Shown in pieces: positions 25,413 through 53,005 of a DNA stretch of 64,000 nt. The translations under genes were made by a program, and so were the position numbers. The stretch covers positions 124,001 to 188,000 of IMG/VR virus record IMGVR_UViG_3300032236_001850; one strand, given 5' to 3'. The notes under the pieces were generated by a model, which saw nothing but the letters and a program-made list of their open reading frames with translations, was not told the origin of the DNA and ran no database searches. Each line of letters starts with the position of its first letter. Position 1 is the first letter of the stretch.

Positions 25413-26177
25413 ATGAATATCATATACGAAATATACGATCCAATAACTGGTAAAAAATACATAGGATCAAAGACCAACTGGAAAGGTCCAGGTACATATT
25501 ACGGTTCGTCAAAAAATCAGGAAATGTTAGATATTATAAAGGAACGCAAATCGACTCTAATATTTAAAATATTAGAGGAGGTTGATTCCATAAGTAATAT
25601 ACTTGAAAGAGAGGAATATTGGCAGAGACTGTATGGAGTTGCAGAATCGGAAATGTATTGGAATCAAAGATACGCATATGCTTGGGGATTTTACATGACA
25701 GGAAAAACCCACACGCAGGAGTCAATAGATAAAATAAAAAAGAGCCACAATGATCCAAAGATGGTCAATCACCTTAGAGAAAAAGCAAAAGAAAAATGGG
25801 ACGAAAAGAGGGAGAATGGCGAAGATTATTTTAGTCAGGAAGGAATGGATAATTTAAGAAAAGAGGGTGCTAAGGTTGGAAAATTTCCAAGAAATGAGGA
25901 ATGGTCAAGAAAACATAGAGAGAGAAAATTAGGTTCCTCCAATACACCAGAAAGTAAAATTAAAGCATCTAAGTCACTAAAGTTAAAATATCTAAATGGT
26001 GAAATAGAAAATGCTTATGCTAAAAAAGTTATAGCAACATCAGAAACCGATGGAACAGAAACGGAACACAAGTCTATAACACAAGGAGCTATCTCAATAG
26101 GTTATAAAGCACACAACATAAGACAAGCCATTAAAACAGGAAAGCCATTAGGTGGGTTTTACTGGAAATTAAAGTAG
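25413..26177 (+). CDS. Free-standing GIY-YIG (Seg-like) homing endonuclease
   Basis: IIYEIY...KYIGSK, YYGSS, REEYW; NUMOD3-like GKTHTQESIDKIKKS; NUMOD1-like C-terminus. Confidence 0.9.
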   Translation: MNIIYEIYDPITGKKYIGSKTNWKGPGTYYGSSKNQEMLDIIKERKSTLIFKILEEVDSISNILEREEYWQRLYGVAESEMYWNQRYAYAWGFYMTGKTHTQESIDKIKKSHNDPKMVNHLREKAKEKWDEKRENGEDYFSQEGMDNLRKEGAKVGKFPRNEEWSRKHRERKLGSSNTPESKIKASKSLKLKYLNGEIENAYAKKVIATSETDGTETEHKSITQGAISIGYKAHNIRQAIKTGKPLGGFYWKLK

Positions 26178-27444: not shown

Positions 27445-27475
27445 AAACCTGCTGTTCTCACCAGCAGGTTTTTTT
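27445..27475 (+). terminator. Intrinsic terminator
   Basis: AAACCTGCTG-ttctcac-CAGCAGGTTT-T run. Confidence 0.9.
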
Positions 27476-27520: not shown

Positions 27521-27597
27521 TCAGGATGTGGAAAATATATCGGGAAATATTTTTTTATTCGGAAAGAATTTCTTATATTTGTAAAAAGATTTATTGA

Positions 27598-28038
27598 ATG
27601 TTAAAAGAATCAAAACTATACAAAACCTACATCAGATTTAATAAGGACGAGAAGGTCTTTGAGGAGATAGTTCTAGACAGAACACATCAGGAAAGATTCG
27701 AACGTTTTAAATCTCGACTCGAATTTTGTGTCTCTGTTGGGGATTTAGTTAGGGTTAGAGATGGTAGTGGAAATTTAGATTTTGATGATGGAAAGAAACG
27801 ATTCGGCATTGACGAGCTATTCAAACAGAATCCAGCATTAGTCATCGAGACTGGTCTTTCTTTTATAACAGAACCCATGGTGGGAATAGGTGAGAGCTCC
27901 AGATACGTCCTGGATCTACTTCTTCTTTTTCCAGAAGGGGAAAGAGTTTACACGTCGACCACCTTTGTGGAACCGACTAATGATGATGAATGGAGATATT
28001 ACGGAACAACATGGCCAAAATGGGACAGAATCAGATAG
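27598..28038 (+). CDS. Hypothetical SH3/KOW-like protein, C-terminal WDRIR
   Basis: VGDLVRV motif; ends KWDRIR. Confidence 0.8.
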   Translation: MLKESKLYKTYIRFNKDEKVFEEIVLDRTHQERFERFKSRLEFCVSVGDLVRVRDGSGNLDFDDGKKRFGIDELFKQNPALVIETGLSFITEPMVGIGESSRYVLDLLLLFPEGERVYTSTTFVEPTNDDEWRYYGTTWPKWDRIR

Positions 28039-28274
28039 GGGTCATCAAAAATGATATTGAGTTCGATTACAGACTCGATGATCCCTATGCTGGGATTATA
28101 TTTGCTACCCTACGCAAGGGTGAATTTGTTAAACTCAGTAATCCAAGAATTGGTAACTTTGATACTGTTTACTATGATGGTCTAATAACGGAAGGAGAGC
28201 ACAGTGGGGTGGTTTTAAATATAGCAGATTATGATGTTGACATAATAGACACAACATGGAAAAAGATCAGATAG
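28020..28274 (+). CDS. Small beta-barrel-like protein, C-terminal WKKIR
   Basis: Start within 19-nt overlap; ends TWKKIR. Confidence 0.8.
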   Translation: MGQNQIGVIKNDIEFDYRLDDPYAGIIFATLRKGEFVKLSNPRIGNFDTVYYDGLITEGEHSGVVLNIADYDVDIIDTTWKKIR

Positions 28275-28477
28275 CAATATTAAAAAACTCTAGACTTATT
28301 AGATCAAGTAATGGATATGTGCTATGGAAATCAGGAACTGGATTGATAGCAACCAAGACAAATTTTGAGGATTTGTACATCGTAAACACACTAGAGAATA
28401 ACGTTTTACATTGTTCAATATCATCAGCGGAGATAATAATATTAGAATGGGTAAATAAATGGAAAAGACTAAGATAG
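28256..28477 (+). CDS. Small protein, C-terminal WKRLR
   Basis: 19-nt overlap start; ends KWKRLR. Confidence 0.8.
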   Translation: MEKDQIAILKNSRLIRSSNGYVLWKSGTGLIATKTNFEDLYIVNTLENNVLHCSISSAEIIILEWVNKWKRLR

Positions 28478-28740
28478 GTGTTTTAACACAGAAACTGGTC
28501 TTCCAAGAAAAATGTGGGGAAACTTTCAAAGAGATCACGTGGCATAAAGGAACCATAGTGGAGATATACGAATGTGGAGAAAATATTTACCATAAGACCA
28601 AAAGACTTCAGTATCAAGAAAGTGATAAGGTAAAAGTTTACTACTGTAACGAATGGAAGTTTACCATGATAGCTAAACACCGGATAGATGTTATGGAGGT
28701 GGATGATATTAGATGGGAAAAAATATTAAGCAAAGATTAA
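28459..28740 (+). CDS. Small protein, C-terminal WEKIL
   Basis: 19-nt overlap start. Confidence 0.8.
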   Translation: MEKTKIGVLTQKLVFQEKCGETFKEITWHKGTIVEIYECGENIYHKTKRLQYQESDKVKVYYCNEWKFTMIAKHRIDVMEVDDIRWEKILSKD

Positions 28741-28750
28741 AGATTTTAAA

Positions 28751-29026
28751 GTGATACAAGCAAATGACGTGCATATAGCGGTTCTTAAGGAGACATTTAG
28801 GACAACCAATTATCAATCAGGTGGATTTATAACATGGAACGAAAATGAAGCAGTACAGGTCAAGCATAATGGAGTTGACGGATCACCGCTATGGTACTGT
28901 TTAAAATTGGATGAGTCTACGGATGTTGACATTGATGAATTCATATATAATGGTCTTGTAGCTGCTTCGAGCCAGTTGGATTTTATAGAAGTTAATTGGG
29001 TAAATGTAAATGGGATCAACAGATAA
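28751..29026 (+). CDS. Small protein, paralog A1
   Basis: GTG start; first ~108 nt nearly identical to 29173 onward. Confidence 0.8.
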   Translation: MIQANDVHIAVLKETFRTTNYQSGGFITWNENEAVQVKHNGVDGSPLWYCLKLDESTDVDIDEFIYNGLVAASSQLDFIEVNWVNVNGINR

Positions 29027-29159
29027 ATTAGGAGTAGTTAAAAAAATTCGATGCATCCATATACAGAAAAGATCTTATATGGGAGGAAGGAGAGATTGTT
29101 TGGATTGGTGGCGAAGATTAATAGATGGAATCCAAATAGAATTTAAACGAATAAGGTGA
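29010..29159 (+). CDS. 49-aa ORF B1, doubly frameshifted paralog of 29442..29660 (not in ORF track)
   Basis: MGSTDKLGVVKK...IQIEFKRIR; middle DNA aligns to B2 in another frame. Confidence 0.55.
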   Translation: MGSTDKLGVVKKIRCIHIQKRSYMGGRRDCLDWWRRLIDGIQIEFKRIR

Positions 29160-29455
29160 TTGATATGGATGAAATACAGGCAAATGACGTGCGTATAGCG
29201 GTCCTTAATAAGGCATTTAAGACAACCAATTATCAATCAGGTGGATTTATATCATGGAACGAAAATGAAGCAGTACAGGTCATAAAACACGGTGGAAGGA
29301 TGAGTATGCACCTATGGTGCTGTATAAAAATGGAAGATCCAGTAATTGGACTACATAGAAATAATCTACCAAAAAATCTTATTGTTTCTAGGAGTCATTT
29401 GGAGTTTATAAATATGGAGTTTATAAATATAAAAAACGAAGGTGGAACCAACTGA
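29156..29455 (+). CDS. Small protein, paralog A2
   Basis: TTNYQSGGFISWNENEAVQV shared with A1. Confidence 0.8.
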   Translation: MIDMDEIQANDVRIAVLNKAFKTTNYQSGGFISWNENEAVQVIKHGGRMSMHLWCCIKMEDPVIGLHRNNLPKNLIVSRSHLEFINMEFINIKNEGGTN

Positions 29456-29660
29456 TAGATTAGCAATTATAAAGACAGAATTCGAGACATCCATATATGG
29501 GAATGAACTTATATGGAAAGGTGGAGAGATTGTTTGGATTGGCGGGGAAGATGCTATAACTGGTATGGTAACTATTTGCAAATTTGACAAGCCATTTGCA
29601 ACATACGTTCCGAAAGATTCGGTTGATGAATTCATAATAGAATGGCAAAATATTGGATGA
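29442..29660 (+). CDS. Small protein B2, C-terminal WQNIG
   Basis: IWKGGEIVWIGGED; ends IEWQNIG. Confidence 0.8.
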   Translation: MEPTDRLAIIKTEFETSIYGNELIWKGGEIVWIGGEDAITGMVTICKFDKPFATYVPKDSVDEFIIEWQNIG

Positions 29661-29884
29661 TGGAAACTACCAAATATTTAGGTACATTAACAAGATCACT
29701 GGTATCGCAGGATTTAGGAAAGGATAAGATTCTATGGGGTGAGGGTGAAACAGTTATAGTAAAAGAAATTGACGGTAATCCAGAATATTTCAGGATAATC
29801 AAACTACAAAACACATTAGGAAATATGGTAGTGCCACACTCAGCATTCATATACTACAGACCAGACTGGGTCAAATTAAGGTAA
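29642..29884 (+). CDS. Small protein, C-terminal WVKLR
   Basis: 19-nt overlap start; ILWGEGETV resembles B2. Confidence 0.8.
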   Translation: MAKYWMMETTKYLGTLTRSLVSQDLGKDKILWGEGETVIVKEIDGNPEYFRIIKLQNTLGNMVVPHSAFIYYRPDWVKLR

Positions 29885-29939
29885 AAATATTTTTTTATTC
29901 AAAAAGAATTTCTTATATTTGCATATCAAATCAATCAAA

Positions 29940-30140
29940 ATGCAAACAGCAACACTTAGAAGATCGGTTTATACAAAATTTGGAGGTTATTACCCTAAGG
30001 GAGCAAAGGTGGAGGTTGATACAATTGATATGGCTAATGACAGGGTATCAATAAAAAAACTAAACTATGAAGGTCCGATAAGGGTTTCACTTAAACCTAA
30101 GGATTTAATTTTCAATATAAAATGGAAACAACTGACATGA
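29940..30140 (+). CDS. Small protein, C-terminal WKQLT
   Basis: ATG 29940 after early promoter. Confidence 0.8.
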   Translation: MQTATLRRSVYTKFGGYYPKGAKVEVDTIDMANDRVSIKKLNYEGPIRVSLKPKDLIFNIKWKQLT

Positions 30141-30583
30141 TATTTAGCAATTCCTTTTATGGAGCATTTCCTGACATGAAAGGGGAATTGATGCGCAGAA
30201 AAGAGCTTGAAGAAAAATTAGACAGAAAAAGAGGAGAAAATTTTATTAATAAGGGTGATTCGATTTCACATTTTCTAATGAAGGATTTCATTATAAACGA
30301 TGATGGAACGGAAAGACCTATAAAACTCAAAGATATATGCTTCGGAAAACCATTTCAGGGTTTAATTCCATCAAGACCCAGCATTTATGCTGTAACTTCA
30401 GTTCATTATGTAGCTGGTTACAAAATAGTTATAAAAAGATTTCAGGACACTTCAGACGACATCATTTGGTATGAAACACCAATAGACCATTACTACTGCA
30501 AAATATCAGAACTGGAGGGAGTAATACACGAACATCTACTCGAAGCAATACAAAGGGATTCAACATGGAACAGAGTAAAATAG
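30122..30583 (+). CDS. Hypothetical protein, C-terminal WNRVK
   Basis: 19-nt overlap start. Confidence 0.8.
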   Translation: METTDMIFSNSFYGAFPDMKGELMRRKELEEKLDRKRGENFINKGDSISHFLMKDFIINDDGTERPIKLKDICFGKPFQGLIPSRPSIYAVTSVHYVAGYKIVIKRFQDTSDDIIWYETPIDHYYCKISELEGVIHEHLLEAIQRDSTWNRVK

Positions 30584-30912
30584 GATTCTTTATAATCAGA
30601 ACGTTCGACGATCTTGTGTTTACTAGAGACGATTTTAGTGGATATCCTGATCAGTACACTGTGGAGATGCTAGAAAGAATAACCCCATTCAGAGCAAGAA
30701 TGAAATTCGAAAAGGAGTTTGGAGGAGATGACACGGAAGCTAGTGTGATCTATGGGGCATCAACATACTCAACCAAAGGAAGGGATGGGGAATATGACAC
30801 ATTTGAGGTTTGGTATTCGGATGAGGATGAACCTAGAGGTTACGAAACCAAGGAACAAATAAATGCAGAATTTCTAAGAAGGAGTTTAAATAAAACATCA
30901 CTGGAGTTATGA
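30565..30912 (+). CDS. Hypothetical protein
   Basis: 19-nt overlap start; ATGA coupling to next gene. Confidence 0.8.
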   Translation: MEQSKIGFFIIRTFDDLVFTRDDFSGYPDQYTVEMLERITPFRARMKFEKEFGGDDTEASVIYGASTYSTKGRDGEYDTFEVWYSDEDEPRGYETKEQINAEFLRRSLNKTSLEL

Positions 30913-31097
30913 AAGTAAAAATATTTAAAAGTTGGATGATTGAGGAACAGCAGAACGAGATCAATCAATGGTTTTCTGAAAATAATGTTATAGTACATAA
31001 CATCACGCAGTCAACCGGGGGAGAGACCACACAATGGACAATCATATCTATATTCTACACAGAAGTTAAACAATTGGAATTTGAAAAAGTTAAGTAA
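30909..31097 (+). CDS. Cse60-like small protein, C-terminal FEKVK
   Basis: KVKIF...EINQWFSEN...ISIFY; paralog of 58060 and 60875. Confidence 0.75.
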   Translation: MKVKIFKSWMIEEQQNEINQWFSENNVIVHNITQSTGGETTQWTIISIFYTEVKQLEFEKVK

Positions 31098-31381
31098 TGG
31101 AGGATTCTACATATCATGCTACACTACTGGGGAAGATAAATGCGATGAAATTTTATGAATTTGTATATGACGACAAGTTTCCTAATCCGTTAGTCAATAG
31201 AAATCTATTAAATGGCCAAAGATATACGATATTCATCAATTCACACACAACCGGAACACATAACAGATTTCTGATGAATGGTAAATTTAACACCGGGTAC
31301 GGCAGCATAAGCTTCGGTGGGGAAATACTTGGAAATATACTAACAATAGGAAATCCTCCACAATTTCAAAAAATTCTTTAA
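31097..31381 (+). CDS. Hypothetical protein, C-terminal FQKIL
   Basis: TAATG coupling. Confidence 0.75.
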   Translation: MEDSTYHATLLGKINAMKFYEFVYDDKFPNPLVNRNLLNGQRYTIFINSHTTGTHNRFLMNGKFNTGYGSISFGGEILGNILTIGNPPQFQKIL

Positions 31382-31441
31382 ATAATTTTTTTATTCAAAA
31401 AGGATTTTATATATTTGCCATGTAATCAAAATGAAAACACA

Positions 31442-31819
31442 ATGGCATACAACGTAACTACATGGAAAATGAAGAGCATGGATAATCTAGTTATCCCACT
31501 TGCAGCTCTTTACGAATCACCAAGAAAAGACTGGCATCCTAAGGAGCCAAAAATCAAAGACGCAGTCACTATGGAGGTTTCTCTACAATGCGGATGTGAG
31601 CAGGAAATTGTTGGGATTCTGAAAGAAGGAAACCTACACGTCACCAAACTCTCAATGTCGGGTGAAGGATCAGGGGGATTTATTGGCGGAGTGCTTAGAC
31701 CAGCATTAGAAAAAAGCACAGGATCATTCTCAGCTTTAGCTGTTTGGGAGGGAGGAGATTCCATAACTAATATTGGATTCCAAGATGGATTCTACAAAGA
31801 GGAGGACGTAGAGCTATGA
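31442..31819 (+). CDS. Hypothetical protein
   Basis: ATG 31442 after early promoter; AVWEGGDSI. Confidence 0.8.
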   Translation: MAYNVTTWKMKSMDNLVIPLAALYESPRKDWHPKEPKIKDAVTMEVSLQCGCEQEIVGILKEGNLHVTKLSMSGEGSGGFIGGVLRPALEKSTGSFSALAVWEGGDSITNIGFQDGFYKEEDVEL

Positions 31820-32250
31820 AATATCCAAACCCAATAGACACACTGTTTAGTGAGCACCTTCATGGCAAAGAAGCCTATATCAGGGCAGCAGGTTTAGTAT
31901 CAGAAGGAAACATAGACTCCAAATGTATAATGGAATACCGTAAGTACAGCGGTGTGGTATGCAAATCAGAGCTCAAGTGGAACGCAGTTGAAATCAAGGA
32001 TGAATTTCTAAAGAAGTTAAACTCAATTAGGGAGGAAGCTGGACTGACTTATGATATGCGTGATGCTGTACACAAGGGAGCAAACGAATTGTTTGACACA
32101 CTCCACGTTAAAGTTGGTATGATTTACTATCACTCGGTAGTTAAACACGAGGTACTAACAGATAAGGATGGCGTGATAACAAGAGTTGATTTAACTTACG
32201 AAAACGGTACAACCGTAGAGATTAGAAACATAACTAACATAAGAAAATAA
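31816..32250 (+). CDS. Hypothetical protein
   Basis: ATGA coupling. Confidence 0.8.
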   Translation: MKYPNPIDTLFSEHLHGKEAYIRAAGLVSEGNIDSKCIMEYRKYSGVVCKSELKWNAVEIKDEFLKKLNSIREEAGLTYDMRDAVHKGANELFDTLHVKVGMIYYHSVVKHEVLTDKDGVITRVDLTYENGTTVEIRNITNIRK

Positions 32251-32254
32251 AACC

Positions 32255-32644
32255 ATGGACACAAAAATATATTTTGACGTTGAGAAAATAAGCGTCATAG
32301 AAGTTAGACCAGAAACCCTATCAGACTATGTTTTCTATCCAGAAAAACCGGCCTACCAGAGGCACATCTTTGGTTTCATCCCATCAGGTAAGAACCCATA
32401 TCTTCCGCCAAGATGGAGTTCCGACGAAGGATGGTTTTATAAAACCGACGAGGATCTAAGATCTTATAACCACTATCGAATAGACGACGTTGAGAAAAAG
32501 ATATATCACAGAGCACGTGTGGTGATTCATCTTGGCTACAAGGAGAGTGTTAATAGAGTATTTGACTCAACGGATGAAGCAATGGAATGGGCGGATCATA
32601 TAATTAGAACATCAGGAAAAAACTTAGAATTATTAATCAAATAA
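32255..32644 (+). CDS. Hypothetical protein
   Basis: 129 aa. Confidence 0.8.
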   Translation: MDTKIYFDVEKISVIEVRPETLSDYVFYPEKPAYQRHIFGFIPSGKNPYLPPRWSSDEGWFYKTDEDLRSYNHYRIDDVEKKIYHRARVVIHLGYKESVNRVFDSTDEAMEWADHIIRTSGKNLELLIK

Positions 32645-32652
32645 AATTAGAA

Positions 32653-33060
32653 ATGGCAACAAGATCAAGAATTGGAATTGAGAGAGAAAACGGACATATA
32701 GAATCCATCTATTGTCACTGGGATGGCTATCCTAGCCACAATGGTAAAATCTTAGCGGAACATTACACGGACCCGGAAAAAATTAAAGCATTAATAGCAC
32801 TGGGTGACATCAGCTCATTAAACGAAAACGTTAGTCCTGCCGACGGTGTTGAACATTCATTCGATAAACCAGCAGAGAATGTAACAGTAGCATATCACAG
32901 AGACAGAGGTGAGGATTTAACCAAAGCAAGAGTAAGCTACTCAATGAAAGGTTTCGAACAAAGCGACTACGAGGAATATGGATACATATTTACAAAAGAC
33001 AACCAATGGAAAGTGGTTGGAGTTAAAAAATGCTTCGTTCCGCTAGCTGACGTTATATAA
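32653..33060 (+). CDS. Conserved-type phage hypothetical (TRSRIG...YCHWDGYP family)
   Basis: MATRSRIGI...IYCHWDGYPSHNG...YHRDRGE. Confidence 0.88.
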   Translation: MATRSRIGIERENGHIESIYCHWDGYPSHNGKILAEHYTDPEKIKALIALGDISSLNENVSPADGVEHSFDKPAENVTVAYHRDRGEDLTKARVSYSMKGFEQSDYEEYGYIFTKDNQWKVVGVKKCFVPLADVI

Positions 33061-33081
33061 TAGAAACCAATACAAGTTAAT

Positions 33082-33118
33082 AAAATCCGAATAAATATTT
33101 TTTTATTCGGATTTTTTT
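33082..33118 (+). terminator. Terminator overlapping next promoter
   Basis: AATCCGAATAAA-tattt-TTTATTCGGATT-T run. Confidence 0.75.
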
Positions 33119-33146
33119 ATTATATTTGCTTATTAAATCCAATTAA

Positions 33147-33452
33147 ATGAGGGTAATAGAAATAAAGAAACACGTTACTAATGGATTCAGACTTGGACAT
33201 CTGATACTTGACGATTACTACAGCAACGACGATGTTGAATACGAGGTTGAGGATTGGTGTCACAAAGACGGAAGTGGACATAGTAGAGGATGGAGGAGTG
33301 AATGGAGAGAGATTACCGACGTCACGGAGAGAGGAGTAATCATGATGGAGGAACATAGAAAACTAGGAAAATCCATAGAGAGAATTGAAAAAAGAAGAAA
33401 AGACATTCTTGATAATCTAATAGTACCATTCGTAGAAATACATAGAAAATGA
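33147..33452 (+). CDS. Hypothetical protein
   Basis: 101 aa after early promoter. Confidence 0.8.
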   Translation: MRVIEIKKHVTNGFRLGHLILDDYYSNDDVEYEVEDWCHKDGSGHSRGWRSEWREITDVTERGVIMMEEHRKLGKSIERIEKRRKDILDNLIVPFVEIHRK

Positions 33453-33652
33453 TAATAGACACAATATACATACCAGCATTGAGCTTTTTAGTTCTATGTT
33501 TTCTCACTTTAATAGCCAATGGTTTTAAAGCAGACGTACCTGAAAATCGTCTGGCCTTGGTTTTTATGGTTTTAGCAGTAATCAATCTTTACTATGATGT
33601 TATATTCTACTTTGTTAAACTCGTAGAATGGATGCTATCATCAGTTGTTTAG
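33449..33652 (+). CDS. Small membrane protein
   Basis: Two hydrophobic helices; ATGA coupling. Confidence 0.75.
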   Translation: MIIDTIYIPALSFLVLCFLTLIANGFKADVPENRLALVFMVLAVINLYYDVIFYFVKLVEWMLSSVV

Positions 33653-33861
33653 TTACTTTTTAATAACATCCACAAGAACTGCAAAGAAGCAAATTCCTAG
33701 GAAAACGCCAATCACATAAAGTGGGCATGTAGGGTCAGGGTTCATTATAGGGTACATATTTCTGCTATATATCGGTTTATGGTATCAAATTGTAACATTT
33801 TTATCCCAAAATATTTTTTTATTTCATTATTTTTTCATATATTTGCATAAAGTAATATCAT

Positions 33862-34215
33862 ATGTTGGTTTCTGAACTGTGTCCTAGCAAATATCTGATA
33901 ACAGATGCCCATTTTGAAGAGATCCAGTGGGTAATTTCAAAGGAGGTTCCATTAACACACTTTGCAAGTATAGCAGGTGGTCTTGTATTGGTAACAAACG
34001 AAAGACAAATGTGGTATGAAGATACAGATGGCCATGATACTTCCCTATGGATGACCAGGTTTTATGTAAGAGGAGACGAAAATCCTTTCTTCTGGTTTAG
34101 TAAAGGAAACAACAGAATTGGCAATCTGGAAATACAACATCTCAACGAAAATCTCATCAAGAGAATCGGAGAGATAAAATGGAAAAAGATAGAATGGACC
34201 ACATTAGAAAAGTAA
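33862..34215 (+). CDS. Hypothetical protein, near-terminal WKKIE
   Basis: After early promoter. Confidence 0.8.
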   Translation: MLVSELCPSKYLITDAHFEEIQWVISKEVPLTHFASIAGGLVLVTNERQMWYEDTDGHDTSLWMTRFYVRGDENPFFWFSKGNNRIGNLEIQHLNENLIKRIGEIKWKKIEWTTLEK

Positions 34216-34481
34216 TACTTAGCACTATTCCGGATGGCGTTCTAAGAGTACTGGCTGAGTCTAGTCTTGTCTTGGTACCGCCAAACTTTGAAGATAATGT
34301 CTTCAATAGGGCAGGTATTGATATAGAACTACCAAATTTATCAATGAATATAGAAAGGTTTGTTGATACCGATCATTGGTGGATAGAAGACGAATATTAC
34401 AGCTACTATACACCAGAAGAGATGGATAGGAAGCTAGCGGAAGAAATATCAAAATCGGTTACATGGATAAAAATTCAATAG
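34179..34481 (+). CDS. Hypothetical protein, C-terminal WIKIQ
   Basis: Start formed by A+TGG of the upstream Trp. Confidence 0.8.
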   Translation: MEKDRMDHIRKVILSTIPDGVLRVLAESSLVLVPPNFEDNVFNRAGIDIELPNLSMNIERFVDTDHWWIEDEYYSYYTPEEMDRKLAEEISKSVTWIKIQ

Positions 34482-34744
34482 TTTATATAAAGGAAATATT
34501 CACTGACGCTATGTTCGAATCCGGATATCGGAGGGATAACGACGAGTGCGACGTGTTTCCAATAGTAAGACCTGACGAGAGAATAAATCCAATAGTTATA
34601 GAAAGATTAAAATTAGCTACAAGAGGTAATAAACGTCTATATTGGATAACGGGATTCAATCTACCCAGCATGGATGCAGAAGAGGTGGAAAGAGAAGTAA
34701 TAAAAGATATAATGGAATGTTTAGTATGGGAAAATATAAAATAG
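34463..34744 (+). CDS. Hypothetical protein, C-terminal WENIK
   Basis: 19-nt overlap start. Confidence 0.8.
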   Translation: MDKNSIVYIKEIFTDAMFESGYRRDNDECDVFPIVRPDERINPIVIERLKLATRGNKRLYWITGFNLPSMDAEEVEREVIKDIMECLVWENIK

Positions 34745-35115
34745 AAAATAGTAAATTTACATTCGATGTCGACGATCTGTTTACAGATTACTCACAAATT
34801 AAAAAATTTCCAATAAGACCTAGTAAGATTGCAGGATTACAGGAAATACTATTTCAGATAACAGAGACCAGAGACGAGTTACCGGAACTATGTGCATTGG
34901 TTGTATACGAAACACAAGGTTATCAATATGTAGTAGAGAATAGGAAAAGAAGTTATTCTAATGATGTCTATCTGAAGATATACAAAATCCACAGCAACGA
35001 TTTTAGAGAAGTTGTTAGTGACTCTACCATTAATCCAGATTACATCGAGGAGTTTATAATTCAACACATATCAAGTCACCTTGAATGGGCAAAAATACCG
35101 TGGGTTGGGGTATAA
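34726..35115 (+). CDS. Hypothetical protein, near-terminal WAKIP
   Basis: 19-nt overlap start at ATG 34726. Confidence 0.8.
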   Translation: MGKYKIENSKFTFDVDDLFTDYSQIKKFPIRPSKIAGLQEILFQITETRDELPELCALVVYETQGYQYVVENRKRSYSNDVYLKIYKIHSNDFREVVSDSTINPDYIEEFIIQHISSHLEWAKIPWVGV

Positions 35116-35179
35116 AAAGATTGAATATTATTTTTATATTAAAAGATAATTTCATATATTTGCATATTAAACAGAGAAA

Positions 35180-35494
35180 ATGAAAAAAATAAAGCTACCA
35201 AAAATCAATCTTAAGTCAATCTGGGAAACCGTAGAGTTTCCTTTTGTTTGTTTGTTTTTACTCATCCTATTTTTTGGCTGTATTGTTATAGCTGCAAATG
35301 GTTATAAGGAGGAGAAGGGGGAATATCCAAAACCAATTAAGCTTGGACTTGGTGACAATATAAAAGCTAGCTTGGTTGTAACCGGATCACATGAGTACAT
35401 AGTAACAACATACACAACCAAAACTGGAGCAGGAATTTCAACTATACATAATCAAAGTTGCAAATTTTGTGCAGCTAAAAAATCAAAAAAATGA
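35180..35494 (+). CDS. Single-TM membrane protein
   Basis: TM at residues ~20-40; after early promoter. Confidence 0.8.
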   Translation: MKKIKLPKINLKSIWETVEFPFVCLFLLILFFGCIVIAANGYKEEKGEYPKPIKLGLGDNIKASLVVTGSHEYIVTTYTTKTGAGISTIHNQSCKFCAAKKSKK

Positions 35495-35742
35495 GATTAA
35501 TAGCATTCCTGTATCGATTACCAATACTTCCTATATTAATAGGGTATGAGCTCTATGTTATCAATAGAATAGTAAAGGAGTCCGATATGAACGACCTAAT
35601 GGAGATACAATCCAGTGGAGACCTTCAAAAGATTACTCATCCCTACTTGGAAACATTTAGAAAAAAATACTCAGGACCTTTACATCTATTTTCGATCCTA
35701 TCATGGATAACCTTCATAAGAATAGCTATAATGCATCACTAA
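35491..35742 (+). CDS. Membrane protein
   Basis: Hydrophobic N- and C-terminal segments. Confidence 0.75.
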   Translation: MRLIAFLYRLPILPILIGYELYVINRIVKESDMNDLMEIQSSGDLQKITHPYLETFRKKYSGPLHLFSILSWITFIRIAIMHH

Positions 35743-35743
35743 T

Positions 35744-36148
35744 ATGAAATTCAAATTTATAAATTTCCAGTACCCCTTTACTAAGGATGAACTCTTGGAA
35801 GACTTCAAGGAGGTTGAGTGCCCGCTACCGTACAATAACCTTCCCGATGGTGAATATCTTATTAGAGGGAATAAGGCACAGCACAGAAAGAAGTATTGGA
35901 AGTCTGGAGATTCTTGGTTTTTTGTTGATGAAAGCACTAGGGATAATGGACACTTCATGTGTGAAGCAACAACTTATAAATTATATCCACAGTTATCAGA
36001 AAAGGAATGGGCAGCTCTATCAGCAGTACCGTTTAAGTGTCTCAATCGTTATTGGCAAAGAGCTCTTTGCGGATATAGGTTCGATATGGAACTGAGAGAG
36101 ATGAGTAGAAATATTGCAAAGGATTTTTTAAGTTTAGATAAAGAATGA
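35744..36148 (+). CDS. Hypothetical protein
   Basis: 134 aa. Confidence 0.8.
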   Translation: MKFKFINFQYPFTKDELLEDFKEVECPLPYNNLPDGEYLIRGNKAQHRKKYWKSGDSWFFVDESTRDNGHFMCEATTYKLYPQLSEKEWAALSAVPFKCLNRYWQRALCGYRFDMELREMSRNIAKDFLSLDKE

Positions 36149-36771
36149 AAAGTACCAAATTACTTAGAGTTGTAAGAACTGGTGAAATAGTAAAGATCTT
36201 ATGGAAAAATGATCTTATGACAGCATATAATAAAGCTGCTTGTGATAGTAATGGCTATTCATATTACAATATACTATCGGCAACACAGATTCCTGGTGTT
36301 TTCATACCCAGAGAAACACCAATAAAGGTTAAATACCTAGGACCACATCCAAATGGACAGGGCTCTTTGCATGAATGGATTCCAGTAAGGACAGACGAAT
36401 ACGAAAACATAGAATTATCAGAAGAAGAGGAAAAGAGAGAGCTGGAAAGATTTGAATGGGAAAAATTTAGATTCTCTATGACTGACGATCTAATATCAAT
36501 AACGAAATCCATAGTTAATGAATTTCCAATGCTCCGAGGTCATACATGTATGGTTCACGACGAGGACATAGATAGAACAAACAAGTATGATGGAATATAC
36601 ATTTACCCAGACGGTAACAAATATGAGATTCTCAGAGTATATCGGAATGTAAGGGTTACTATACCAAGAGGTGGGGGACTAGCAATATGTAATTTCAACA
36701 TGGAGGAAGAGTTTGATAGAAAAATATTAACAGGTAACAAAAAAATAGAATGGCAGAAGATAGAAGACTAG
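36145..36771 (+). CDS. Hypothetical protein, C-terminal WQKIED
   Basis: ATGA coupling. Confidence 0.8.
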   Translation: MKSTKLLRVVRTGEIVKILWKNDLMTAYNKAACDSNGYSYYNILSATQIPGVFIPRETPIKVKYLGPHPNGQGSLHEWIPVRTDEYENIELSEEEEKRELERFEWEKFRFSMTDDLISITKSIVNEFPMLRGHTCMVHDEDIDRTNKYDGIYIYPDGNKYEILRVYRNVRVTIPRGGGLAICNFNMEEEFDRKILTGNKKIEWQKIED

Positions 36772-37475
36772 ACAGCATCCTAGACAAGATCAGTAAAAGT
36801 GGAATTGATTCACTATCCAAGGATGAGAGATCGTATCTCAGAAAGATCTCGGGAGAACCAGAACCGAAATTAGATACAAAATTAGTATCCAATCCAAATG
36901 GTTTTAGAATGGCTAACATCAGTTCCGATGTGGAATCGACTGCTGATTGTGTTGCAGCTCTTAATGAATATAAGAACTCAAAATGGAAAAGAAAAACCAA
37001 GTTCAATATCAAGATAACCCCAGAGGAAAGCAGCACGGTTAGAGTATTTACCGACGGTGTGGAAACATTGTCAATTCTGCAATCGCCTAATGATGGAGCA
37101 TTCCTTATCAATTATGATCTTGATACTCTAAGACCACTTATAGAAAAATTACAAAAAACAGCAAAGAAATGCTACACTCATGATTATGGCCAGGTTTATC
37201 TAAATCCGTGGAGCATGAGCGTATGGGTTGTTGGTGGTGATGGTGGAATTGTTCAAACTGATGATAAACCGTCCGATGTAGTAAAAAGATTAGATGAGGG
37301 TGATTGGGGTGACTGTGAATTTGATATTGATTTCAGTGTGGATGCACACGAAATAAAAGACACCATATTGGAAGCTGAATATTTCCCTGCAATGGACGAG
37401 GATTCAGAATACGACGACAACAAAATGGAGTGGATAGAGGTTGCTAGAACAATAGATATATGTAACTTTGAATAA
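36750..37475 (+). CDS. Hypothetical protein
   Basis: LDSILDKISKSGIDSLSKDERSYL helix motif; 22-nt overlap start. Confidence 0.82.
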   Translation: MAEDRRLDSILDKISKSGIDSLSKDERSYLRKISGEPEPKLDTKLVSNPNGFRMANISSDVESTADCVAALNEYKNSKWKRKTKFNIKITPEESSTVRVFTDGVETLSILQSPNDGAFLINYDLDTLRPLIEKLQKTAKKCYTHDYGQVYLNPWSMSVWVVGGDGGIVQTDDKPSDVVKRLDEGDWGDCEFDIDFSVDAHEIKDTILEAEYFPAMDEDSEYDDNKMEWIEVARTIDICNFE

Positions 37476-47156: not shown

Positions 47157-47584
47157 ATGAAACACATACATACATTCTACCAACACATCAACGAATCTCA
47201 ACTCGAAATAGAATCGACCAATCTACCGGATGGGGTAAAAGAGATTGATGAAGAGGAACTTAAAAAATGGGGAAAAAAGCCACACAAATTCTTACCATCG
47301 GGGATGATGAAGCATTTAAACAGTTTAAAAATTGGACTGGAGTGACCAAATCTGAGGATCCCCGGGATTTGCTAGTCCTTAAATCATCATCCACCTCAGA
47401 GGAATATCAATGGTGCTTTGTTCTTTGGACCAAGGAAGAAGATGAGGAGAAAGCAAGACGATTTCTTTCAAGAACACTAGAGGGTGTTTTTGTAACATAC
47501 ATTATCACCTCACCGTCACAAAAAGTTAGAGAGCAGCTAATGCACTACATCAACGATTATGTTAAATGGATCAAAATCAGATAG
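47157..47584 (+). pseudogene. CTS-leader/WIKIR gene split by -1 frameshift at A-AAA-AAG (47273-47279)
   Basis: Leader in frame of 47157; WIKIR in the -1 frame (47267..47584). Confidence 0.75.
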
Positions 47585-47605
47585 ACAAATAAAACATAGA
47601 CAATA

Positions 47606-48046
47606 ATGAAAAACTTAATGATTTTTACTGATTTTTTAAAAGAATCAATTAATTCAGGTGGAATGCCACATCGAAGATATGAAGAAATAACTAAAGATCA
47701 ATGGCGAGAGAAAAAAGAAACACTCCAATGTGTTAGCTTGACAAATGATGAGATAGAGTCAATAGATGAAATATATGAATTTATAAGGGATGTTATATAC
47801 CCAAAAGCAGAAAGAATAAAGTTTTGGGAGTTTTCTCAGAAAGACACTCAATATCTCATCGAAATACGTGATTTAAACATTATGATTACTAAATATTCAC
47901 CATCAATGTGGTTAATTTTTACTAATAGGAATGAGGATGTAGAAGATGAACATTTTTATATTGCAACTTCATTAAAGGAAACAATCGATCTTACAGCATA
48001 TCTTGCGGGTGAATTATTTCATATCGAATGGATCAAAATAAGATAG
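47606..48046 (+). CDS. CTS-leader/WIKIR protein
   Basis: MKNLMIFTDFLKES...IEWIKIR. Confidence 0.85.
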   Translation: MKNLMIFTDFLKESINSGGMPHRRYEEITKDQWREKKETLQCVSLTNDEIESIDEIYEFIRDVIYPKAERIKFWEFSQKDTQYLIEIRDLNIMITKYSPSMWLIFTNRNEDVEDEHFYIATSLKETIDLTAYLAGELFHIEWIKIR

Positions 48047-48050
48047 AAGA

Positions 48051-48683
48051 ATGAAACACATCCATACATTCTCACAACACATCAACGAGAGCTCCTCTCA
48101 GGAGATCATGGACTTCTGCAAGAAGTACAAGATTTCAATTGAACAGTTTAGAGGACAGGAGGAAATCCCAGGTGATTTTAGAAAACTTTCAAATCTAAAA
48201 TCCATTCCTTCAGGTTTCAACCCAAAGGTTGAAGGGAATCTGACTCTTTCCTCGATTTACAGCTTACCTGATGGGTTTTCACCCGTTGTTGGTGGAGATC
48301 TGGAACTGCATGAACTGAATCATTTGCCAGAGGGATTCTCACCCACTGTGGGAAGAGATCTACATCTGAACTATCTAAATCGTATTCCATATGAATTCAC
48401 TGTTAATGTGGGAGACAATCTGATTTTAGATAATGTGTATGAGGTTGGGAAGGGATTCTCACCCACTGTGGGCGGCAATCTGGATCTAGGATCACTCAGA
48501 ATTTATGCGGAAGGATTCTCACCCATCGTGGGCGGGAATCTAATCTTAAATAAAATGGAAAGCATTCCGCTAAAAGGTGTTTCGCTAAAAGGAGTTAAAG
48601 GAAAGATAGAACTTTTTCACAATTACAATCGTGTAAATCTAGAAACCATAGCGGGTGATATAAAATGGATCAAAATAAGATAG
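48051..48683 (+). CDS. CTS-leader/WIKIR protein with 22-aa LRR-like repeats
   Basis: Repeats LxxLPEGFSPxVGGDLxL; DNA repeat ggattctcaccca about every 66 bp. Confidence 0.85.
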   Translation: MKHIHTFSQHINESSSQEIMDFCKKYKISIEQFRGQEEIPGDFRKLSNLKSIPSGFNPKVEGNLTLSSIYSLPDGFSPVVGGDLELHELNHLPEGFSPTVGRDLHLNYLNRIPYEFTVNVGDNLILDNVYEVGKGFSPTVGGNLDLGSLRIYAEGFSPIVGGNLILNKMESIPLKGVSLKGVKGKIELFHNYNRVNLETIAGDIKWIKIR

Positions 48684-48695
48684 GGTATATAGCAC

Positions 48696-49517
48696 ATGAA
48701 AAGAATACTAACATTCCACCAGCTATTTGAAGCAGCCAAACCAAAGGACACATCTTGGATGCCAACCCCCGCGGAGATAAGTCAATTGGAAATTTTTCAA
48801 AATCTGAGAGATGATCATCTTATACGTTTATCCGAACCATACCTCTTAACACAGGGTCAGATAGAAAGGAATGTGAGATCAATAAGTTTTTCAACAGACA
48901 CCAATAACCTTTATAGACTGGAGCCAAATTCAGATGGCACAATCAACATCAAATTTGGAAGAAGCTACATAGCCAAAAATAAGCCTTTCAAAAACCAGGA
49001 GGAAATGACGGATGTTATTATTTACTTAATGATCGTAACAATAGCAATTTATGATCCTGTATGGAGTCGTAAGCCACACAATCCACCCAAAAGAACTCCT
49101 TTCAATGACGATCACGTGAAACTAAATGGGGAATTGGAGAGAGGTGATCTCGAAGGCTTGCTAAACGGCATCACAGAGCTTATGAAATCCAAATTTGGAT
49201 TCTGTGAGGAAAGACTGGTCCAGATTGCGATCATTCTGATGTGGTACATGAAGTCAGCCACACAGGAGGCAAAAAACAACTTCATAAAGCAACTGATCGT
49301 CAATGTGACAGCAGAGAGAATGTTCTTGCATTGGTGCCATCTGCCTAAAATTTTATCTCATCGCCAACCCTTCGTGTCGATGCCTGCAGTTACGGAAGGT
49401 CTCTCCATGGCATTCTCAGATTTTCTTAATAACAATGGGGATGCTCCAATGCCACCAGCTCTGGGGGAGTTCCTTTCCAAGATAACCGATGGGTTCAGAT
49501 GGATTAAAATCAGATAA
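48696..49517 (+). CDS. CTS-leader/WIKIR protein
   Basis: MKRILTFHQLFEA...FRWIKIR; N-terminal part resembles that of 44678..46609. Confidence 0.85.
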   Translation: MKRILTFHQLFEAAKPKDTSWMPTPAEISQLEIFQNLRDDHLIRLSEPYLLTQGQIERNVRSISFSTDTNNLYRLEPNSDGTINIKFGRSYIAKNKPFKNQEEMTDVIIYLMIVTIAIYDPVWSRKPHNPPKRTPFNDDHVKLNGELERGDLEGLLNGITELMKSKFGFCEERLVQIAIILMWYMKSATQEAKNNFIKQLIVNVTAERMFLHWCHLPKILSHRQPFVSMPAVTEGLSMAFSDFLNNNGDAPMPPALGEFLSKITDGFRWIKIR

Positions 49518-50062: not shown

Positions 50063-50065
50063 CAC

Positions 50066-52989: not shown

Positions 52990-53005
52990 AGGAAAACTCT
53001 ATAGA

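What the first reader, a model, noticed from the sequence alone, without database searches (positions are those of the whole stretch)
28020..34744. Eight gene junctions use an identical 19-nt dual-coding overlap: A-TGG-NNN-NNN-NNN-NNN-stop
Seen: the next gene's ATG is formed by A plus the TG of the upstream Trp codon, exactly 19 nt before the end of the upstream stop, at 28020/28038, 28256/28274, 28459/28477, 29642/29660, 30122/30140, 30565/30583, 34463/34481 and 34726/34744 (longer variants at 34179 and 36750). The same DNA reads W-x-K-I-R-stop in one frame and M-E/G/D/A-K/Q-x-K/Q-I-G/A in the -1 frame. Inference: a standard connector supplying the C-terminal tag, start codon and translational coupling at once, allowing plug-in growth of the array by recombination at the connector.
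Basis: partly seen in the sequence, partly recalled or inferred. Interest (0 to 1): 0.8.

Follow-up and report, generated by a model that had tools for sequence, protein, structure and literature searches.

The report
Start codons hidden in a tail motif
In a roughly 434-kb phage of Bacteroidota, about a quarter of the small genes end in the same five-residue tail, and several neighbouring genes start at an ATG built on that tail's tryptophan codon, so this region has an unusual 19-base overlap as its standard gene junction.

Summary
The sequence pattern is real at all eight coordinates: A-TGG, four codons, then a stop, 19 nt in all. It is not chance. The 19-nt overlap is as common here as the canonical 1- and 4-nt overlaps.

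It is not a free-standing device. It follows from a lineage-specific C-terminal pentapeptide, aromatic-x-x-[I/V/L]-[K/R]-stop. This tail ends 23 of 146 genes in the window (0.4 expected), including unrelated proteins and F/Y versions that cannot make an ATG.

Where the aromatic residue is Trp and the preceding base is A, an ATG arises. Three related phage genomes help decide which of these ATGs are used:
- **Only possible start (four of the eight, plus a variant):** 28256, 28459, 30565 and 34463, and the 22-nt variant at 36750.
- **Probable:** 30122, 34726 and 28020.
- **False:** 29642.
- **Displaced:** 34179, where the real start is probably 34194.

The junctions lie inside Shine-Dalgarno-less operons, in A-rich, unstructured contexts, which fits translational coupling. 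That is inferred, not shown.

Eight of the genes are divergent SH3-like paralogues in a hyperplastic array. The four genomes order them differently. Some crossovers lie exactly at the connector and others lie inside genes.

This is a new variant of known overlap and coupling architecture.

The parts
27570..27581 (+). -7 box (TAnnTTTG type) of a Bacteroidota-type promoter that opens the operon 27598-29884. A terminator-like hairpin lies at 27445-27471 just upstream.
27598..28038 (+). Gene X (146 aa), the first gene of the operon. It ends in the tail W-D-R-I-R-stop.
28020..28038 (+). Connector 1 (A-TGG ... TAG). It is a possible start of a1, but in-frame ATGs also lie at 27990 and 28011. In three relatives the same ATG opens only a 9-13 codon relic.
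28020..28274 (+). a1, a member of the SH3-like small-protein family. Its tail is W-K-K-I-R. In L004 and L012 its orthologue starts without any overlap (MLLGV...).
28256..28274 (+). Connector 2. Its ATG is the only ATG/GTG/TTG in the a2 ORF before +63 nt.
28256..28477 (+). a2, a member of the SH3-like family. Its tail is W-K-R-L-R.
28459..28477 (+). Connector 3. The a3 ORF opens exactly at this ATG. The L004 orthologue stands alone, 31 nt after the previous stop, and uses the same ATG.
28459..28740 (+). a3, a member of the SH3-like family, with an extended tail W-E-K-I-L-S-K-D.
28751..29660 (+). A (28751-29026); a chimeric remnant made of a B head and an a7 tail (29010-29159); A' (29165-29455); and B (29442-29660). 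A and the remnant's B-like head are a partial duplicate copy of the A'-B pair (29165-29660); the remnant's last stretch is instead the tail of gene a7, as L012 shows. Junctions here are 17-, 4- and 14-nt overlaps, not connectors.
29642..29660 (+). Pseudo-connector. The A-TGG frame is open only in this genome, where AGA changed to GGA in the tail and so TAG became TGG in the other frame. The true start of gene C is probably 29657 or 29660 (ATGATG on the TGA stop).
29657..29884 (+). C, a member of the SH3-like family and the last gene of its operon. It still carries the tail W-V-K-L-R, here preceded by C rather than A.
29910..29921 (+). -7 box of the promoter for the operon 29940-31381.
29940..30140 (+). 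D, a member of the SH3-like family. Its tail is W-K-Q-L-T.
30122..30140 (+). Connector D>E. A second in-frame ATG lies at 30137 (ATGA on the stop). In L004 the stop is TAA and that second ATG is absent.
30122..30583 (+). E (153 aa), unrelated to the SH3-like family. Its tail is W-N-R-V-K.
30565..30583 (+). Connector E>F. Its ATG is the only start codon before +51 nt and is conserved in four genomes.
30565..30912 (+). F (115 aa), with no tail. It is followed by a 4-nt ATGA overlap.
33834..33845 (+). -7 box of the promoter for the operon 33862-35115.
33862..34215 (+). Gene with a doubled tail, W-K-K-I-E-W-T-T-L-E-K. It carries two A-TGG ATGs, at 34179 and 34194.
34194..34481 (+). The L004 orthologue starts at the position equivalent to 34194, giving a 22-nt overlap. 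Its tail is W-I-K-I-Q.
34463..34481 (+). Connector. It is 19/19 nt identical in L002. In L004 the tail is one codon shorter, giving a 16-nt overlap, but the A-TGG ATG is kept. It is the only start before +48 nt.
34463..34744 (+). 93-aa gene, not SH3-like by HMM. Its tail is W-E-N-I-K.
34726..34744 (+). Connector. A second conserved in-frame ATG lies at 34717.
34726..35115 (+). 129-aa gene at the end of its operon, with an extended tail W-A-K-I-P-W-V-G-V.
36145..36771 (+). 208-aa gene with the tail W-Q-K-I-E-D.
36750..36771 (+). 22-nt connector variant. Its ATG is the only start codon found in the ORF of 36750-37475 (searched to +90 nt).
47267..49517 (+). Four consecutive genes that end W-I-K-I-R, each with A before TGG, whose downstream genes start elsewhere with their own N-terminal motif. 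They serve as natural controls in which the ATG is a by-product.

Best explanation
**Source.** The window is part of a roughly 434-kb phage contig from a metagenome. The host is very probably a member of Bacteroidota.

**The tail.** Many of its small, early-type proteins end in a lineage-specific five-residue tail, aromatic-x-x-[I/V/L]-[K/R], followed directly by the stop. The tail sits on unrelated proteins. In the one confident structure model it hangs beyond the folded domain, so it is most likely a short docking or sorting peptide whose partner is unknown (inferred).

**How the connector arises.** When the aromatic residue is Trp and the codon before it ends in A, the sequence A-TGG makes an ATG 16 nt before the first base of the stop. 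In these tightly packed operons without Shine-Dalgarno sequences, several downstream genes have adopted that ATG as their start. The overlap is always 19 nt because the tail always has the same length.

**Translation.** A ribosome that finishes the upstream gene is released within one footprint of the next start, in an A-rich, unstructured stretch. The downstream gene is therefore probably translated by termination-reinitiation or by easy local initiation (inferred, not shown).

**The array.** The run of genes at 28020-30140 is a hyperplastic array of very divergent SH3-like paralogues. Related genomes carry different sets and orders of these cassettes. Because the first 19 nt of a cassette also encode, in the other frame, a tail and a stop for whatever gene lies upstream, cassettes can be joined in register. 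At least one observed crossover lies exactly at that point. Other rearrangements were ordinary illegitimate events inside genes.
For: **Source and host**
- The window is identical to part of IMGVR_UViG_3300032236_001850, a 434,509-bp contig.
- Its only named relatives are jumbo phages of Chryseobacterium and Tenacibaculum, at 29-33% amino-acid identity.
- The TTTG / TAnnTTTG promoter motif is enriched: 64 matches against 22 expected.
- Only 8 of 146 genes have a Shine-Dalgarno core upstream.

**The tail is general**
- 23 of 146 genes end in the strict motif, against 0.43 expected from composition.
- Ten of these are F or Y versions.
- 10 of 43 independently called genes in L004 carry it.
- An HMM of the SH3-like family finds only its 8 members in the window, so the other tailed proteins are unrelated.
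- In the AF2 model (pLDDT 89.5), the SH3-like fold (TM 0.6-0.75 to SH3 domains) is complete at residue 63, and the tail is coil with lower confidence.

**The ATG is the start**
- It is the only ATG/GTG/TTG before at least +48 nt for 28256, 28459, 30565, 34463 and 36750.
- The a3 orthologue in L004 is free-standing and uses the same ATG, one codon after an in-frame stop.
- L004 lacks the alternative ATGA start of gene E.
- The base before TGG stays A while the residue it encodes changes: T/A/L before 34463 and V/T before 34726.
- TAG is favoured and TAA avoided at the junctions.

**The context looks like a start site**
- The A fraction upstream is 0.45. It is 0.47 at other starts and 0.36 at internal A-TGG sites.
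- Predicted folding energy is -2.05 kcal/mol, against -3.14 at other starts and -6.18 at internal A-TGG sites (p = 1.4e-7).

**Position and plasticity**
- All connectors lie inside promoter-delimited operons.
- The four genomes have four different cassette orders.
- The a1|a3 crossover in L012 is at the 5' edge of the connector.
- Gene X is plugged in behind a connector in L004 but behind a promoter in the window.
- The extra gene a5 in L002 is an indel that runs from tail to tail.
Against: - There are no expression data of any kind. Start sites and coupling are inferred from ORF logic and comparison.
- The four genomes are related, so orthologous junctions are not independent observations.
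- The number of amino-acid changes across orthologous connectors is the same in both frames (37 against 40 for 59 nt differences). Selection on the downstream N-terminal residues cannot be shown.
- A precedes Trp codons in 35% of cases anyway, and at least eight tails in the window and relatives have an A-TGG that opens nothing.
- Termination-reinitiation in model organisms works best at overlaps of 1-8 nt. Longer overlaps are rare, and their coupling is debated (PMC10666635).
- The function of the tail is unknown. The second structure model, of a non-SH3 tailed protein, failed (pLDDT 43).
- Breakpoints at gene borders are what selection would leave behind in any case. Two rearrangements have breakpoints inside genes.
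Confidence: 0.65

Rival explanations
1. **By-product only.** The ATGs are accidents of A-ending codons before a conserved Trp. The real starts lie at or after the upstream stops, and the 19-nt overlaps are annotation artefacts.
For: - This is true for 29642. The frame is closed in L002 and L012, and database calls start at MMET.
- It is probably true for 34179.
- It is possible for 30122, which has an ATGA at +15.
- A precedes 35% of internal Trp codons.
- The four W-I-K-I-R genes at 47267-49517, and several tails in the relatives, have dead A-TGG ATGs.
Against: - For 28256, 28459, 30565, 34463 and 36750 there is no other ATG/GTG/TTG for at least 48 nt. The conserved first strand of the SH3-like proteins starts at the codon that spans the stop.
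- The free-standing a3 in L004 uses the homologous ATG.
- The A is kept while the encoded residue changes.
- The sites have start-like composition and low predicted structure.
Confidence: 0.12
2. **Dedicated recombination adaptor.** The 19-mer, together with the next ~12 nt that encode the first strand, is a module-shuffling site in the manner of the PeSL cassettes of T4-type phages. Recombination between connectors is the main way the array grows and reshuffles, and the element is kept for that purpose.
For: - Four genomes have four different cassette orders, all joined in register.
- The L012 a1|a3 crossover is exactly at the ATGG.
- Window-L002 homology ends 14 nt after connector 1.
- The a5 indel runs from tail to tail.
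- The a3 cassette keeps its connector when it stands alone, with the stop decayed.
- The PeSL precedent is described in PMC2839356 and PMC4122927.
Against: - Connectors are only about 70% alike over 19 nt, which is poor substrate for homologous recombination.
- There is no promoter or stem-loop in them.
- The tandem duplication in L012 and the B/a7 chimera in the window have breakpoints inside gene bodies.
- Selection alone would enrich surviving breakpoints at gene borders.
- The tail exists far from any array.
Confidence: 0.2
3. **Read-through or fusion.** The adjacent ORFs are pieces of one longer product, joined by programmed -1 frameshifting, by stop-codon reassignment (TAG or TGA read as sense) or by sequencing frameshift errors.
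For: - Every junction shifts the frame by -1.
- TAG is over-represented at the junctions.
- Some huge phages of Bacteroidota are known to recode stops (from my own knowledge).
Against: - Recoding any stop does not lengthen the long ORFs.
- Orthologous junctions use TAA, TAG and TGA interchangeably.
- There is no X-XXY-YYZ slippery heptamer, and most connectors have no homopolymer.
- Four independent assemblies agree on the frames.
- The same genes occur free-standing or in another order.
Confidence: 0.03

Closest known systems
Translational coupling at overlapping stop/start codons (ATGA, TAATG; termination-reinitiation)
   Same: The genes are co-directional and lie in one operon. The start of the downstream gene lies within a ribosome footprint of the upstream stop. 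The window also uses the 1- and 4-nt forms freely.
   Different: The overlap is 19 nt, a length class that is rare in surveyed genomes (PMC10666635). It is fixed by a conserved peptide motif rather than by the stop codon itself. Coupling was not tested.
Coat-lysis gene overlap of RNA phage fr (reinitiation after backward scanning), as summarised in PMC10666635
   Same: The start lies tens of nucleotides upstream of the stop of the preceding gene. That gene is proposed to deliver the ribosome.
   Different: That case is a single regulatory pair. Here it is a repeated junction type shared by many gene pairs and genomes.
PeSL promoter/stem-loop cassettes that mediate modular shuffling in T4-type phages (PMC2839356, PMC4122927)
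   Same: A short repeated motif borders small ORFan genes in a hyperplastic region. Indels between close relatives end at or near the motif.
   Different: PeSLs are non-coding promoter-terminator elements. The connector is coding in two frames, lacks a promoter and a hairpin, and lies inside operons. The window does have separate terminator-plus-promoter elements between operons.
Capsid targeting sequence of T4 internal proteins (PMC3012670)
   Same: A short conserved terminal peptide is shared by otherwise diverse, fast-evolving phage proteins.
   Different: The T4 signal is N-terminal and has a known role. The tail here is C-terminal and its role is unknown. The window also has a separate N-terminal motif.
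SH3 / SH3-like small beta-barrel domains
   Same: The predicted fold of the array proteins matches SH3 domains, with TM 0.6-0.75.
   Different: There is no sequence-level match to any Pfam or PHROG family. The family has only 14 representatives among 1.84 billion proteins.

Membership tests
Translationally coupled overlapping gene pair (termination-reinitiation) | The two genes are co-directional and on one transcript | tested here: met
   All connectors lie between Bacteroidota-type promoter boxes at 27570, 29910, 33834 and 35151, with no promoter box or terminator hairpin inside the runs. This rests on motifs only, not on transcript data.
Translationally coupled overlapping gene pair (termination-reinitiation) | The start codon lies at or within a few nucleotides of the upstream stop (-1, -4, -8) | tested here: not met
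   The overlap is 19 nt (16 or 22 nt in variants). It still lies within one ribosome footprint.
Translationally coupled overlapping gene pair (termination-reinitiation) | Downstream translation depends on upstream translation | not testable with these tools
   This needs reporters or ribosome profiling.
PeSL-type mobile regulatory cassette | The repeated element contains an early promoter and a stem-loop terminator | tested here: not met
   The connectors contain no hairpin or promoter box. Such elements exist separately between the operons.
PeSL-type mobile regulatory cassette | Insertions, deletions and replacements between close relatives are bounded by the element | tested here: inconclusive
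   Some are bounded by it and others are not.
Programmed -1 ribosomal frameshift site | A slippery heptamer X-XXY-YYZ followed by a stimulatory structure | tested here: not met
   The eight 19-mers share no slippery heptamer. The surrounding 50 nt are among the least structured in the window.
Stop-codon-recoded phage | Genes become long and contiguous only when one stop codon is read as sense | tested here: not met
   The longest ORFs do not change under any recoding. Orthologous junctions swap TAG, TAA and TGA.
SH3 domain superfamily | A five-stranded small barrel with a 3-10 turn before the last strand | tested here: met
   The AF2 model has pLDDT 89.5. The top 50 Foldseek hits are nearly all SH3 domains, with TM 0.57-0.75 and E about 0.02.
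SH3 domain superfamily | A sequence match to a curated SH3 family | tested here: not met
   There is no Pfam or PHROG hit.

The most novel reading that the evidence does not exclude
The pentapeptide is a true signal, for docking, sorting or timed degradation, read by one phage or host receptor. Each cassette carries at its 5' end a bifunctional 19-nt adaptor. This adaptor starts the cassette and also donates the signal and a stop codon to whatever gene lies upstream. It would be a coding-sequence counterpart of the PeSL elements, letting a huge phage plug early genes in and out in register without needing ribosome-binding sites.
Probability: 0.22. Interest if true: 0.85.

Novelty: new variant of a known kind. 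Interest (0 to 1): 0.58.

Why it matters
Huge phages carry hundreds of small genes of unknown function, and little is known about how those genes are expressed, sorted or exchanged.
- **A handle on the small proteins.** A shared C-terminal peptide on about a quarter of them would give a way to find their common partner, by peptide pull-down or by screening co-folding predictions.
- **Start-site choice.** A start codon routinely embedded in that peptide's Trp codon shows how a phage of hosts that ignore Shine-Dalgarno sequences can chain many cistrons together. It also gives a testable case of reinitiation at a 19-nt overlap, a distance over which coupling is disputed.
- **Annotation.** In this lineage the 19-nt overlaps should not be trimmed away by gene callers. 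Nor should every A-TGG be taken as a start.

Tried and rejected
- **Nucleotide search against deposited phages:** no match for the array.
- **Pfam and PHROGs on 20 array and neighbouring proteins:** nothing, apart from a DUF6576 hit at the N-terminus of 36750-37475.
- **Profile search of 1.84 billion representative proteins:** only 14 hits, all from this lineage.
- **Contigs for the more distant hits:** too short, or no DNA available.
- **Relative of the W-I-K-I-R gene cluster in IMG/VR:** only the window's own contig was found.
- **Exact scan of IMG/VR for the 18-mer coding W-I-K-I-R plus TAG:** single chance matches elsewhere, and three copies in the window's own contig.
- **Tail motif in Chryseobacterium phage MA9V-2:** 0 of 55 CDS, so no cultured phage with the motif was found.
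- **AF2 model of the 34463 family from 5 sequences:** pLDDT 43, unusable.
- **Rfam and tRNA scans:** nothing.
- **E. coli-type promoter scan:** below expectation.
- **Test of which frame is more constrained:** no difference between the two.
- **Stop-codon recoding, frameshifting and assembly error:** considered and rejected.
- **Tail as merely the last strand of one shared domain:** rejected.

Full report
**1. What the window is**

The window is 35% G+C and mostly coded on the + strand. It holds about 146 small genes under the standard genetic code. It has no tRNA genes and no Rfam match.

It is identical to positions 124001-188000 of IMGVR_UViG_3300032236_001850, a 434,509-bp viral contig. 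A 567-aa protein finds only jumbo phages of Chryseobacterium and Tenacibaculum, at 29-33% identity.

Two features point to a host in Bacteroidota:
- The intergenic regions carry a repeated element with a T-rich -33 region and a TAnnTTTG -7 box. The box matches 64 times, against 22 expected.
- Only 8 of 146 genes have a Shine-Dalgarno core upstream. Ribosomes of this phylum ignore Shine-Dalgarno sequences. They rely instead on unstructured, A-rich leaders with A at -3, -6, -12 and -13 (PMC6847099).

The promoter boxes at 27570, 29910, 31406, 33117, 33834 and 35151 end 17-25 nt before the first ATG of each gene run. Terminator-like hairpins precede two of them. Every junction in the finding lies inside one of these operons.

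**2. The observation**

All eight 19-mers and both longer variants are present as described.

The 19-nt class is not chance:
- It accounts for 8 same-strand gene pairs in my gene model, against 9 at 1 nt and 10 at 4 nt.
- It is the commonest overlap in independent database gene calls for a related contig.
- In surveyed bacteria and archaea, overlaps longer than 8 nt are rare (PMC10666635).
- Stop-codon usage at the junctions (TAG 6, TGA 2, TAA 0) differs sharply from the rest of the window, where 94 of 138 stops are TAA.

**3. The tail is the primary feature**

Reading the C-termini of all genes showed that the five residues are not special to the array. The strict pattern [W/F/Y]-x-x-[I/V/L]-[R/K]-stop ends 23 of 146 genes, against 0.43 expected from composition.

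Examples elsewhere in the window include:
- four consecutive W-I-K-I-R genes at 47267-49517;
- W-I-E-I-K (ends at 50521), W-V-R-L-R (39009), F-I-K-I-R (start at 6985, minus strand) and F-T-K-I-K (22150);
- F-E-K-V-K (31097), F-K-R-I-K (39885), F-Q-S-I-K (53791), F-Q-Q-I-K (54060) and Y-V-K-V-K (58242).

Looser forms add about ten more. Genes at the ends of operons also carry the tail, for example those ending at 29884 and 39885.

The substitutions are conservative at the protein level: W/F/Y, I/V/L and K/R, with varied codons. Selection therefore acts on the peptide.

The tail also sits on unrelated proteins:
- An HMM of the small-protein family finds only its eight members in the window.
- In a confident AF2 model of one member (pLDDT 89.5), the SH3-like barrel is complete at residue 63. 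The last eight residues, tail included, are coil with lower confidence.

The motif is absent from 55 CDS of Chryseobacterium phage MA9V-2. The fixed 19 nt is simply one base, five codons and a stop.

**4. Is the ATG used?**

A precedes 35% of internal Trp codons, so many Trp tails will contain an ATG by accident, and several do:
- The four W-I-K-I-R genes all have A-TGG, yet their neighbours start elsewhere with their own N-terminal motif.
- In relative L002, four tails have an A-TGG that opens only 2-13 codons.

Three related genomes were then used as natural experiments: L002 (IMG/VR, 430 kb), L004 (ENA, 83 kb) and L012 (JGI, 45 kb). The results, junction by junction:
- **28256, 28459, 30565, 34463 and 36750.** The A-TGG ATG is the only ATG, GTG or TTG in the ORF until at least 48 nt downstream. 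That is beyond the conserved first strand, which begins at the codon spanning the stop.
- **28459.** The orthologue of a3 in L004 stands alone, 31 nt after the previous stop. Its ORF opens one codon before the homologous ATG, and its N-terminus is MENTRVGVL, against MEKTKIGVL in the window. The old tail frame survives there as a relic with its stop lost.
- **30122.** The window and L002 have a second ATG on the TGA stop, but L004 has TAA there and no second ATG.
- **34463 and 34726.** The residue before Trp changes (T, A or L; V or T) while its third base stays A. In L004 the tail before the 34463 orthologue is one codon shorter, giving a 16-nt overlap with the ATG kept.
- **34726 and 28020.** Both have further in-frame ATGs 9 nt upstream, and 28020 has another 30 nt upstream. 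They remain ambiguous.
- **34179.** The L004 orthologue starts at the second ATG. The window gene therefore probably starts at 34194, with a 22-nt overlap.
- **29642.** This is a false junction. L002 reads MGEN-stop and L012 reads MAKY-stop in that frame, and both start at ATGATG on the stop. The window frame is open only because AGA became GGA in the tail, which also explains its odd ending, W-Q-N-I-G.

The live connectors also look like start sites. Over the 20 nt upstream and the surrounding 50 nt:

| Site class | A fraction | G+C | Folding energy (kcal/mol) |
|---|---|---|---|
| Live connectors | 0.45 | 0.29 | -2.05 |
| Other starts | 0.47 | 0.26 | -3.14 |
| Internal A-TGG sites | 0.36 | 0.41 | -6.18 |

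The difference in folding energy between live connectors and internal A-TGG sites has p = 1.4e-7. These samples include orthologues, so they are not independent.

**5. What is and is not dual-coded**

Across orthologous connectors, the two frames accumulate the same number of amino-acid changes: 37 and 40 for 59 nucleotide differences. The invariant parts are ATGG, the hydrophobic codon at tail position 4, and the stop.

Residues 2-5 of the downstream protein are free riders. Family members that start after the stop simply have other leaders, such as MLLGV, MDEIQANDV and MKDTDEIQAKD.

The preference for TAG fits the downstream frame. A-TAG-G gives Ile followed by Gly, Ala or Val, which is the first strand of the barrel. 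Relatives do tolerate TAA.

**6. The array and its rearrangements**

The eight genes at 28020-30140 form a very divergent family with 15-25% identity. The common pattern is I-[A/G]-[V/I]-[L/I]-K, then W-x-x-G-E-x-V, then K-L-D, then the tail. Only 14 representatives exist among 1.84 billion proteins.

Gene orders differ in all four genomes, where 'c' is a live connector and '|' is a promoter:
- **Window:** X-c-a1-c-a2-c-a3-A-remnant-A'-B-C | D-c-E-c-F
- **L002:** X-(dead c)-Y-a4-A-a5-B-C | D-c-E-c-F
- **L004:** Y-a1-c-X-(dead c)-a3-c-a6-c-a7-A-B | D-c-E-c-F
- **L012:** X-(dead c)-Y-a1-c-a3-c-a6-c-a7-A'-B-C | D-c-E-c-F

Events at or next to connectors:
- In L012 the a1 body is joined to an a3-type connector, with the switch at the ATGG itself. 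The connector travelled with the downstream cassette and supplied the last five residues and stop of a1.
- In L004 the body of X follows an a1-type connector (MEKDQIA...). In the window X has its own ATG behind a promoter.
- Window-L002 homology ends 14 nt after connector 1.
- The extra gene a5 of L002 is an indel from tail to tail.
- L002 15617/15622 looks like an overlap resolved by duplication of the first 9 nt of the connector.

Events not at connectors:
- Window 29010-29159 is a chimera of a B head and an a7 tail.
- The tandem duplicate of the 34463-like gene in L012 has both breakpoints inside neighbouring genes and leaves two remnant ORFs.

The connector therefore permits in-register joining and was the crossover point at least once. 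The data do not show that it drives recombination. Selection would keep border breakpoints in any case.

**7. Mechanism proposed**

Shown:
- the motif, its enrichment and its presence on unrelated proteins;
- the ORF logic for the starts;
- the operon context;
- the start-like composition of the sites;
- the plasticity of the array.

Inferred:
- The tail is a docking or sorting peptide.
- Ribosomes ending the upstream gene reinitiate at, or clear the way for, the ATG 16 nt before the stop.
- The arrangement persists because any indel inside it would damage two genes at once. It can be undone only by duplication or by moving the gene.

**8. Comparison with known systems**

- It works like ordinary overlap coupling, but at a distance that is unusual and disputed (PMC10666635, PMC6728339).
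- It resembles PeSL-mediated shuffling in outcome, though not in the nature of the element (PMC2839356, PMC4122927).
- The tail recalls the shared targeting peptide of the T4 internal proteins (PMC3012670), but at the other end of the protein.
- I found no description of a conserved C-terminal motif that doubles as the standard start site of the next gene. The literature searches were limited.

**9. Verdict**

The primary object is the tail motif, and the connector is its exaptation as a start site. It is a new variant of a known kind. Interest is moderate to high, mainly because the tail points to an unknown system acting on a large share of a huge phage's small proteins.

Noticed in passing
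window, N-termini of 17 genes, e.g. 2779(-), 3965(-), 5569(-), 6684(-), 7922(+), 40620(-), 41208(-), 46609(-), 46745(+), 47606(+), 48051(+), 48696(+), 49577(+), 51544(+): There is a second pervasive terminal motif. Seventeen of 146 proteins begin M-[K/R]-x-[I/L]-x-x-[F/Y], often continuing with x-x-[F/L]-x-E, against 0.3 expected. They are mostly larger proteins (100-640 aa), and three also carry the W-I-K-I-R tail. From memory, the motif recalls the N-terminal capsid targeting sequence of the T4 internal proteins. That resemblance was not tested.
   Followed up: partly
window 13425-13456, 15248, 16463-16494, 18242, 19964-19995, 22909, 24325, 27570, 29910, 31406, 33117, 33834, 35151, 41257-41288, 55263-55294, 55804-55835 and others (+ strand): A repeated intergenic element of about 55-85 nt has a T-rich -33 region and a TTC[A/T]TATATTTG -7 box, which is the Bacteroidota-type promoter consensus. 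The box ends only 17-25 nt before the first ATG, so leaders are very short. Two copies are preceded by strong hairpin-plus-T-run terminators (27445-27471 and 33082-33115). This gives a promoter-terminator composite like the PeSL elements.
   Followed up: partly
window 28713-28754, 48028-48054, 35085-35183: Three 'dead' A-TGG ATGs open mini-ORFs of 13, 8 and 32 codons. Each ends in a TGA that overlaps the start codon of the next gene: GTGA at 28751, ATGA at 48051 and ATGA at 35180. This could be a relay for coupling or a coincidence. The relics in L002 and L004 do not end this way.
   Followed up: partly
window 25413-26177; L002 11226-12131: Homing-endonuclease-like genes are present in one genome and absent from the other, on either side of the conserved 379-aa gene. 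The window has one upstream (PHROG 314) that L002 lacks. L002 has a different 301-aa gene downstream, next to other inserted genes that the window also lacks.
   Followed up: no
window 2075-6684(-), 44678-46609(-), 48696-49517(+): A six-member paralogue family of 208-643 aa has the N-terminal motif above. Five members share the C-terminus I-G-[R/K]-x-L-[K/R]-x-G-x-[I/L]. The sixth instead ends in the W-I-K-I-R tail.
   Followed up: no
window 50001-54000: G+C rises to 0.43-0.46, against about 0.35 elsewhere. Overlapping ORFs lie on both strands at 51496-52185. There is no Rfam or tRNA hit. The cause is unknown.
   Followed up: no
window 36750-37475: The N-terminal 35 residues of this 241-aa protein match Pfam DUF6576 (E = 2e-7). 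This is the only Pfam hit among the 20 array and neighbouring proteins scanned (27598-37475).
   Followed up: no
tailed genes across the window: TAG stops are enriched among all tailed genes: 11 of 23, against 16 of 123 untailed genes (p = 4e-4). This includes tailed genes with no overlapping neighbour (21839-22150, 37846-38208, 47267-48683). The downstream-frame argument explains only part of it.
   Followed up: partly
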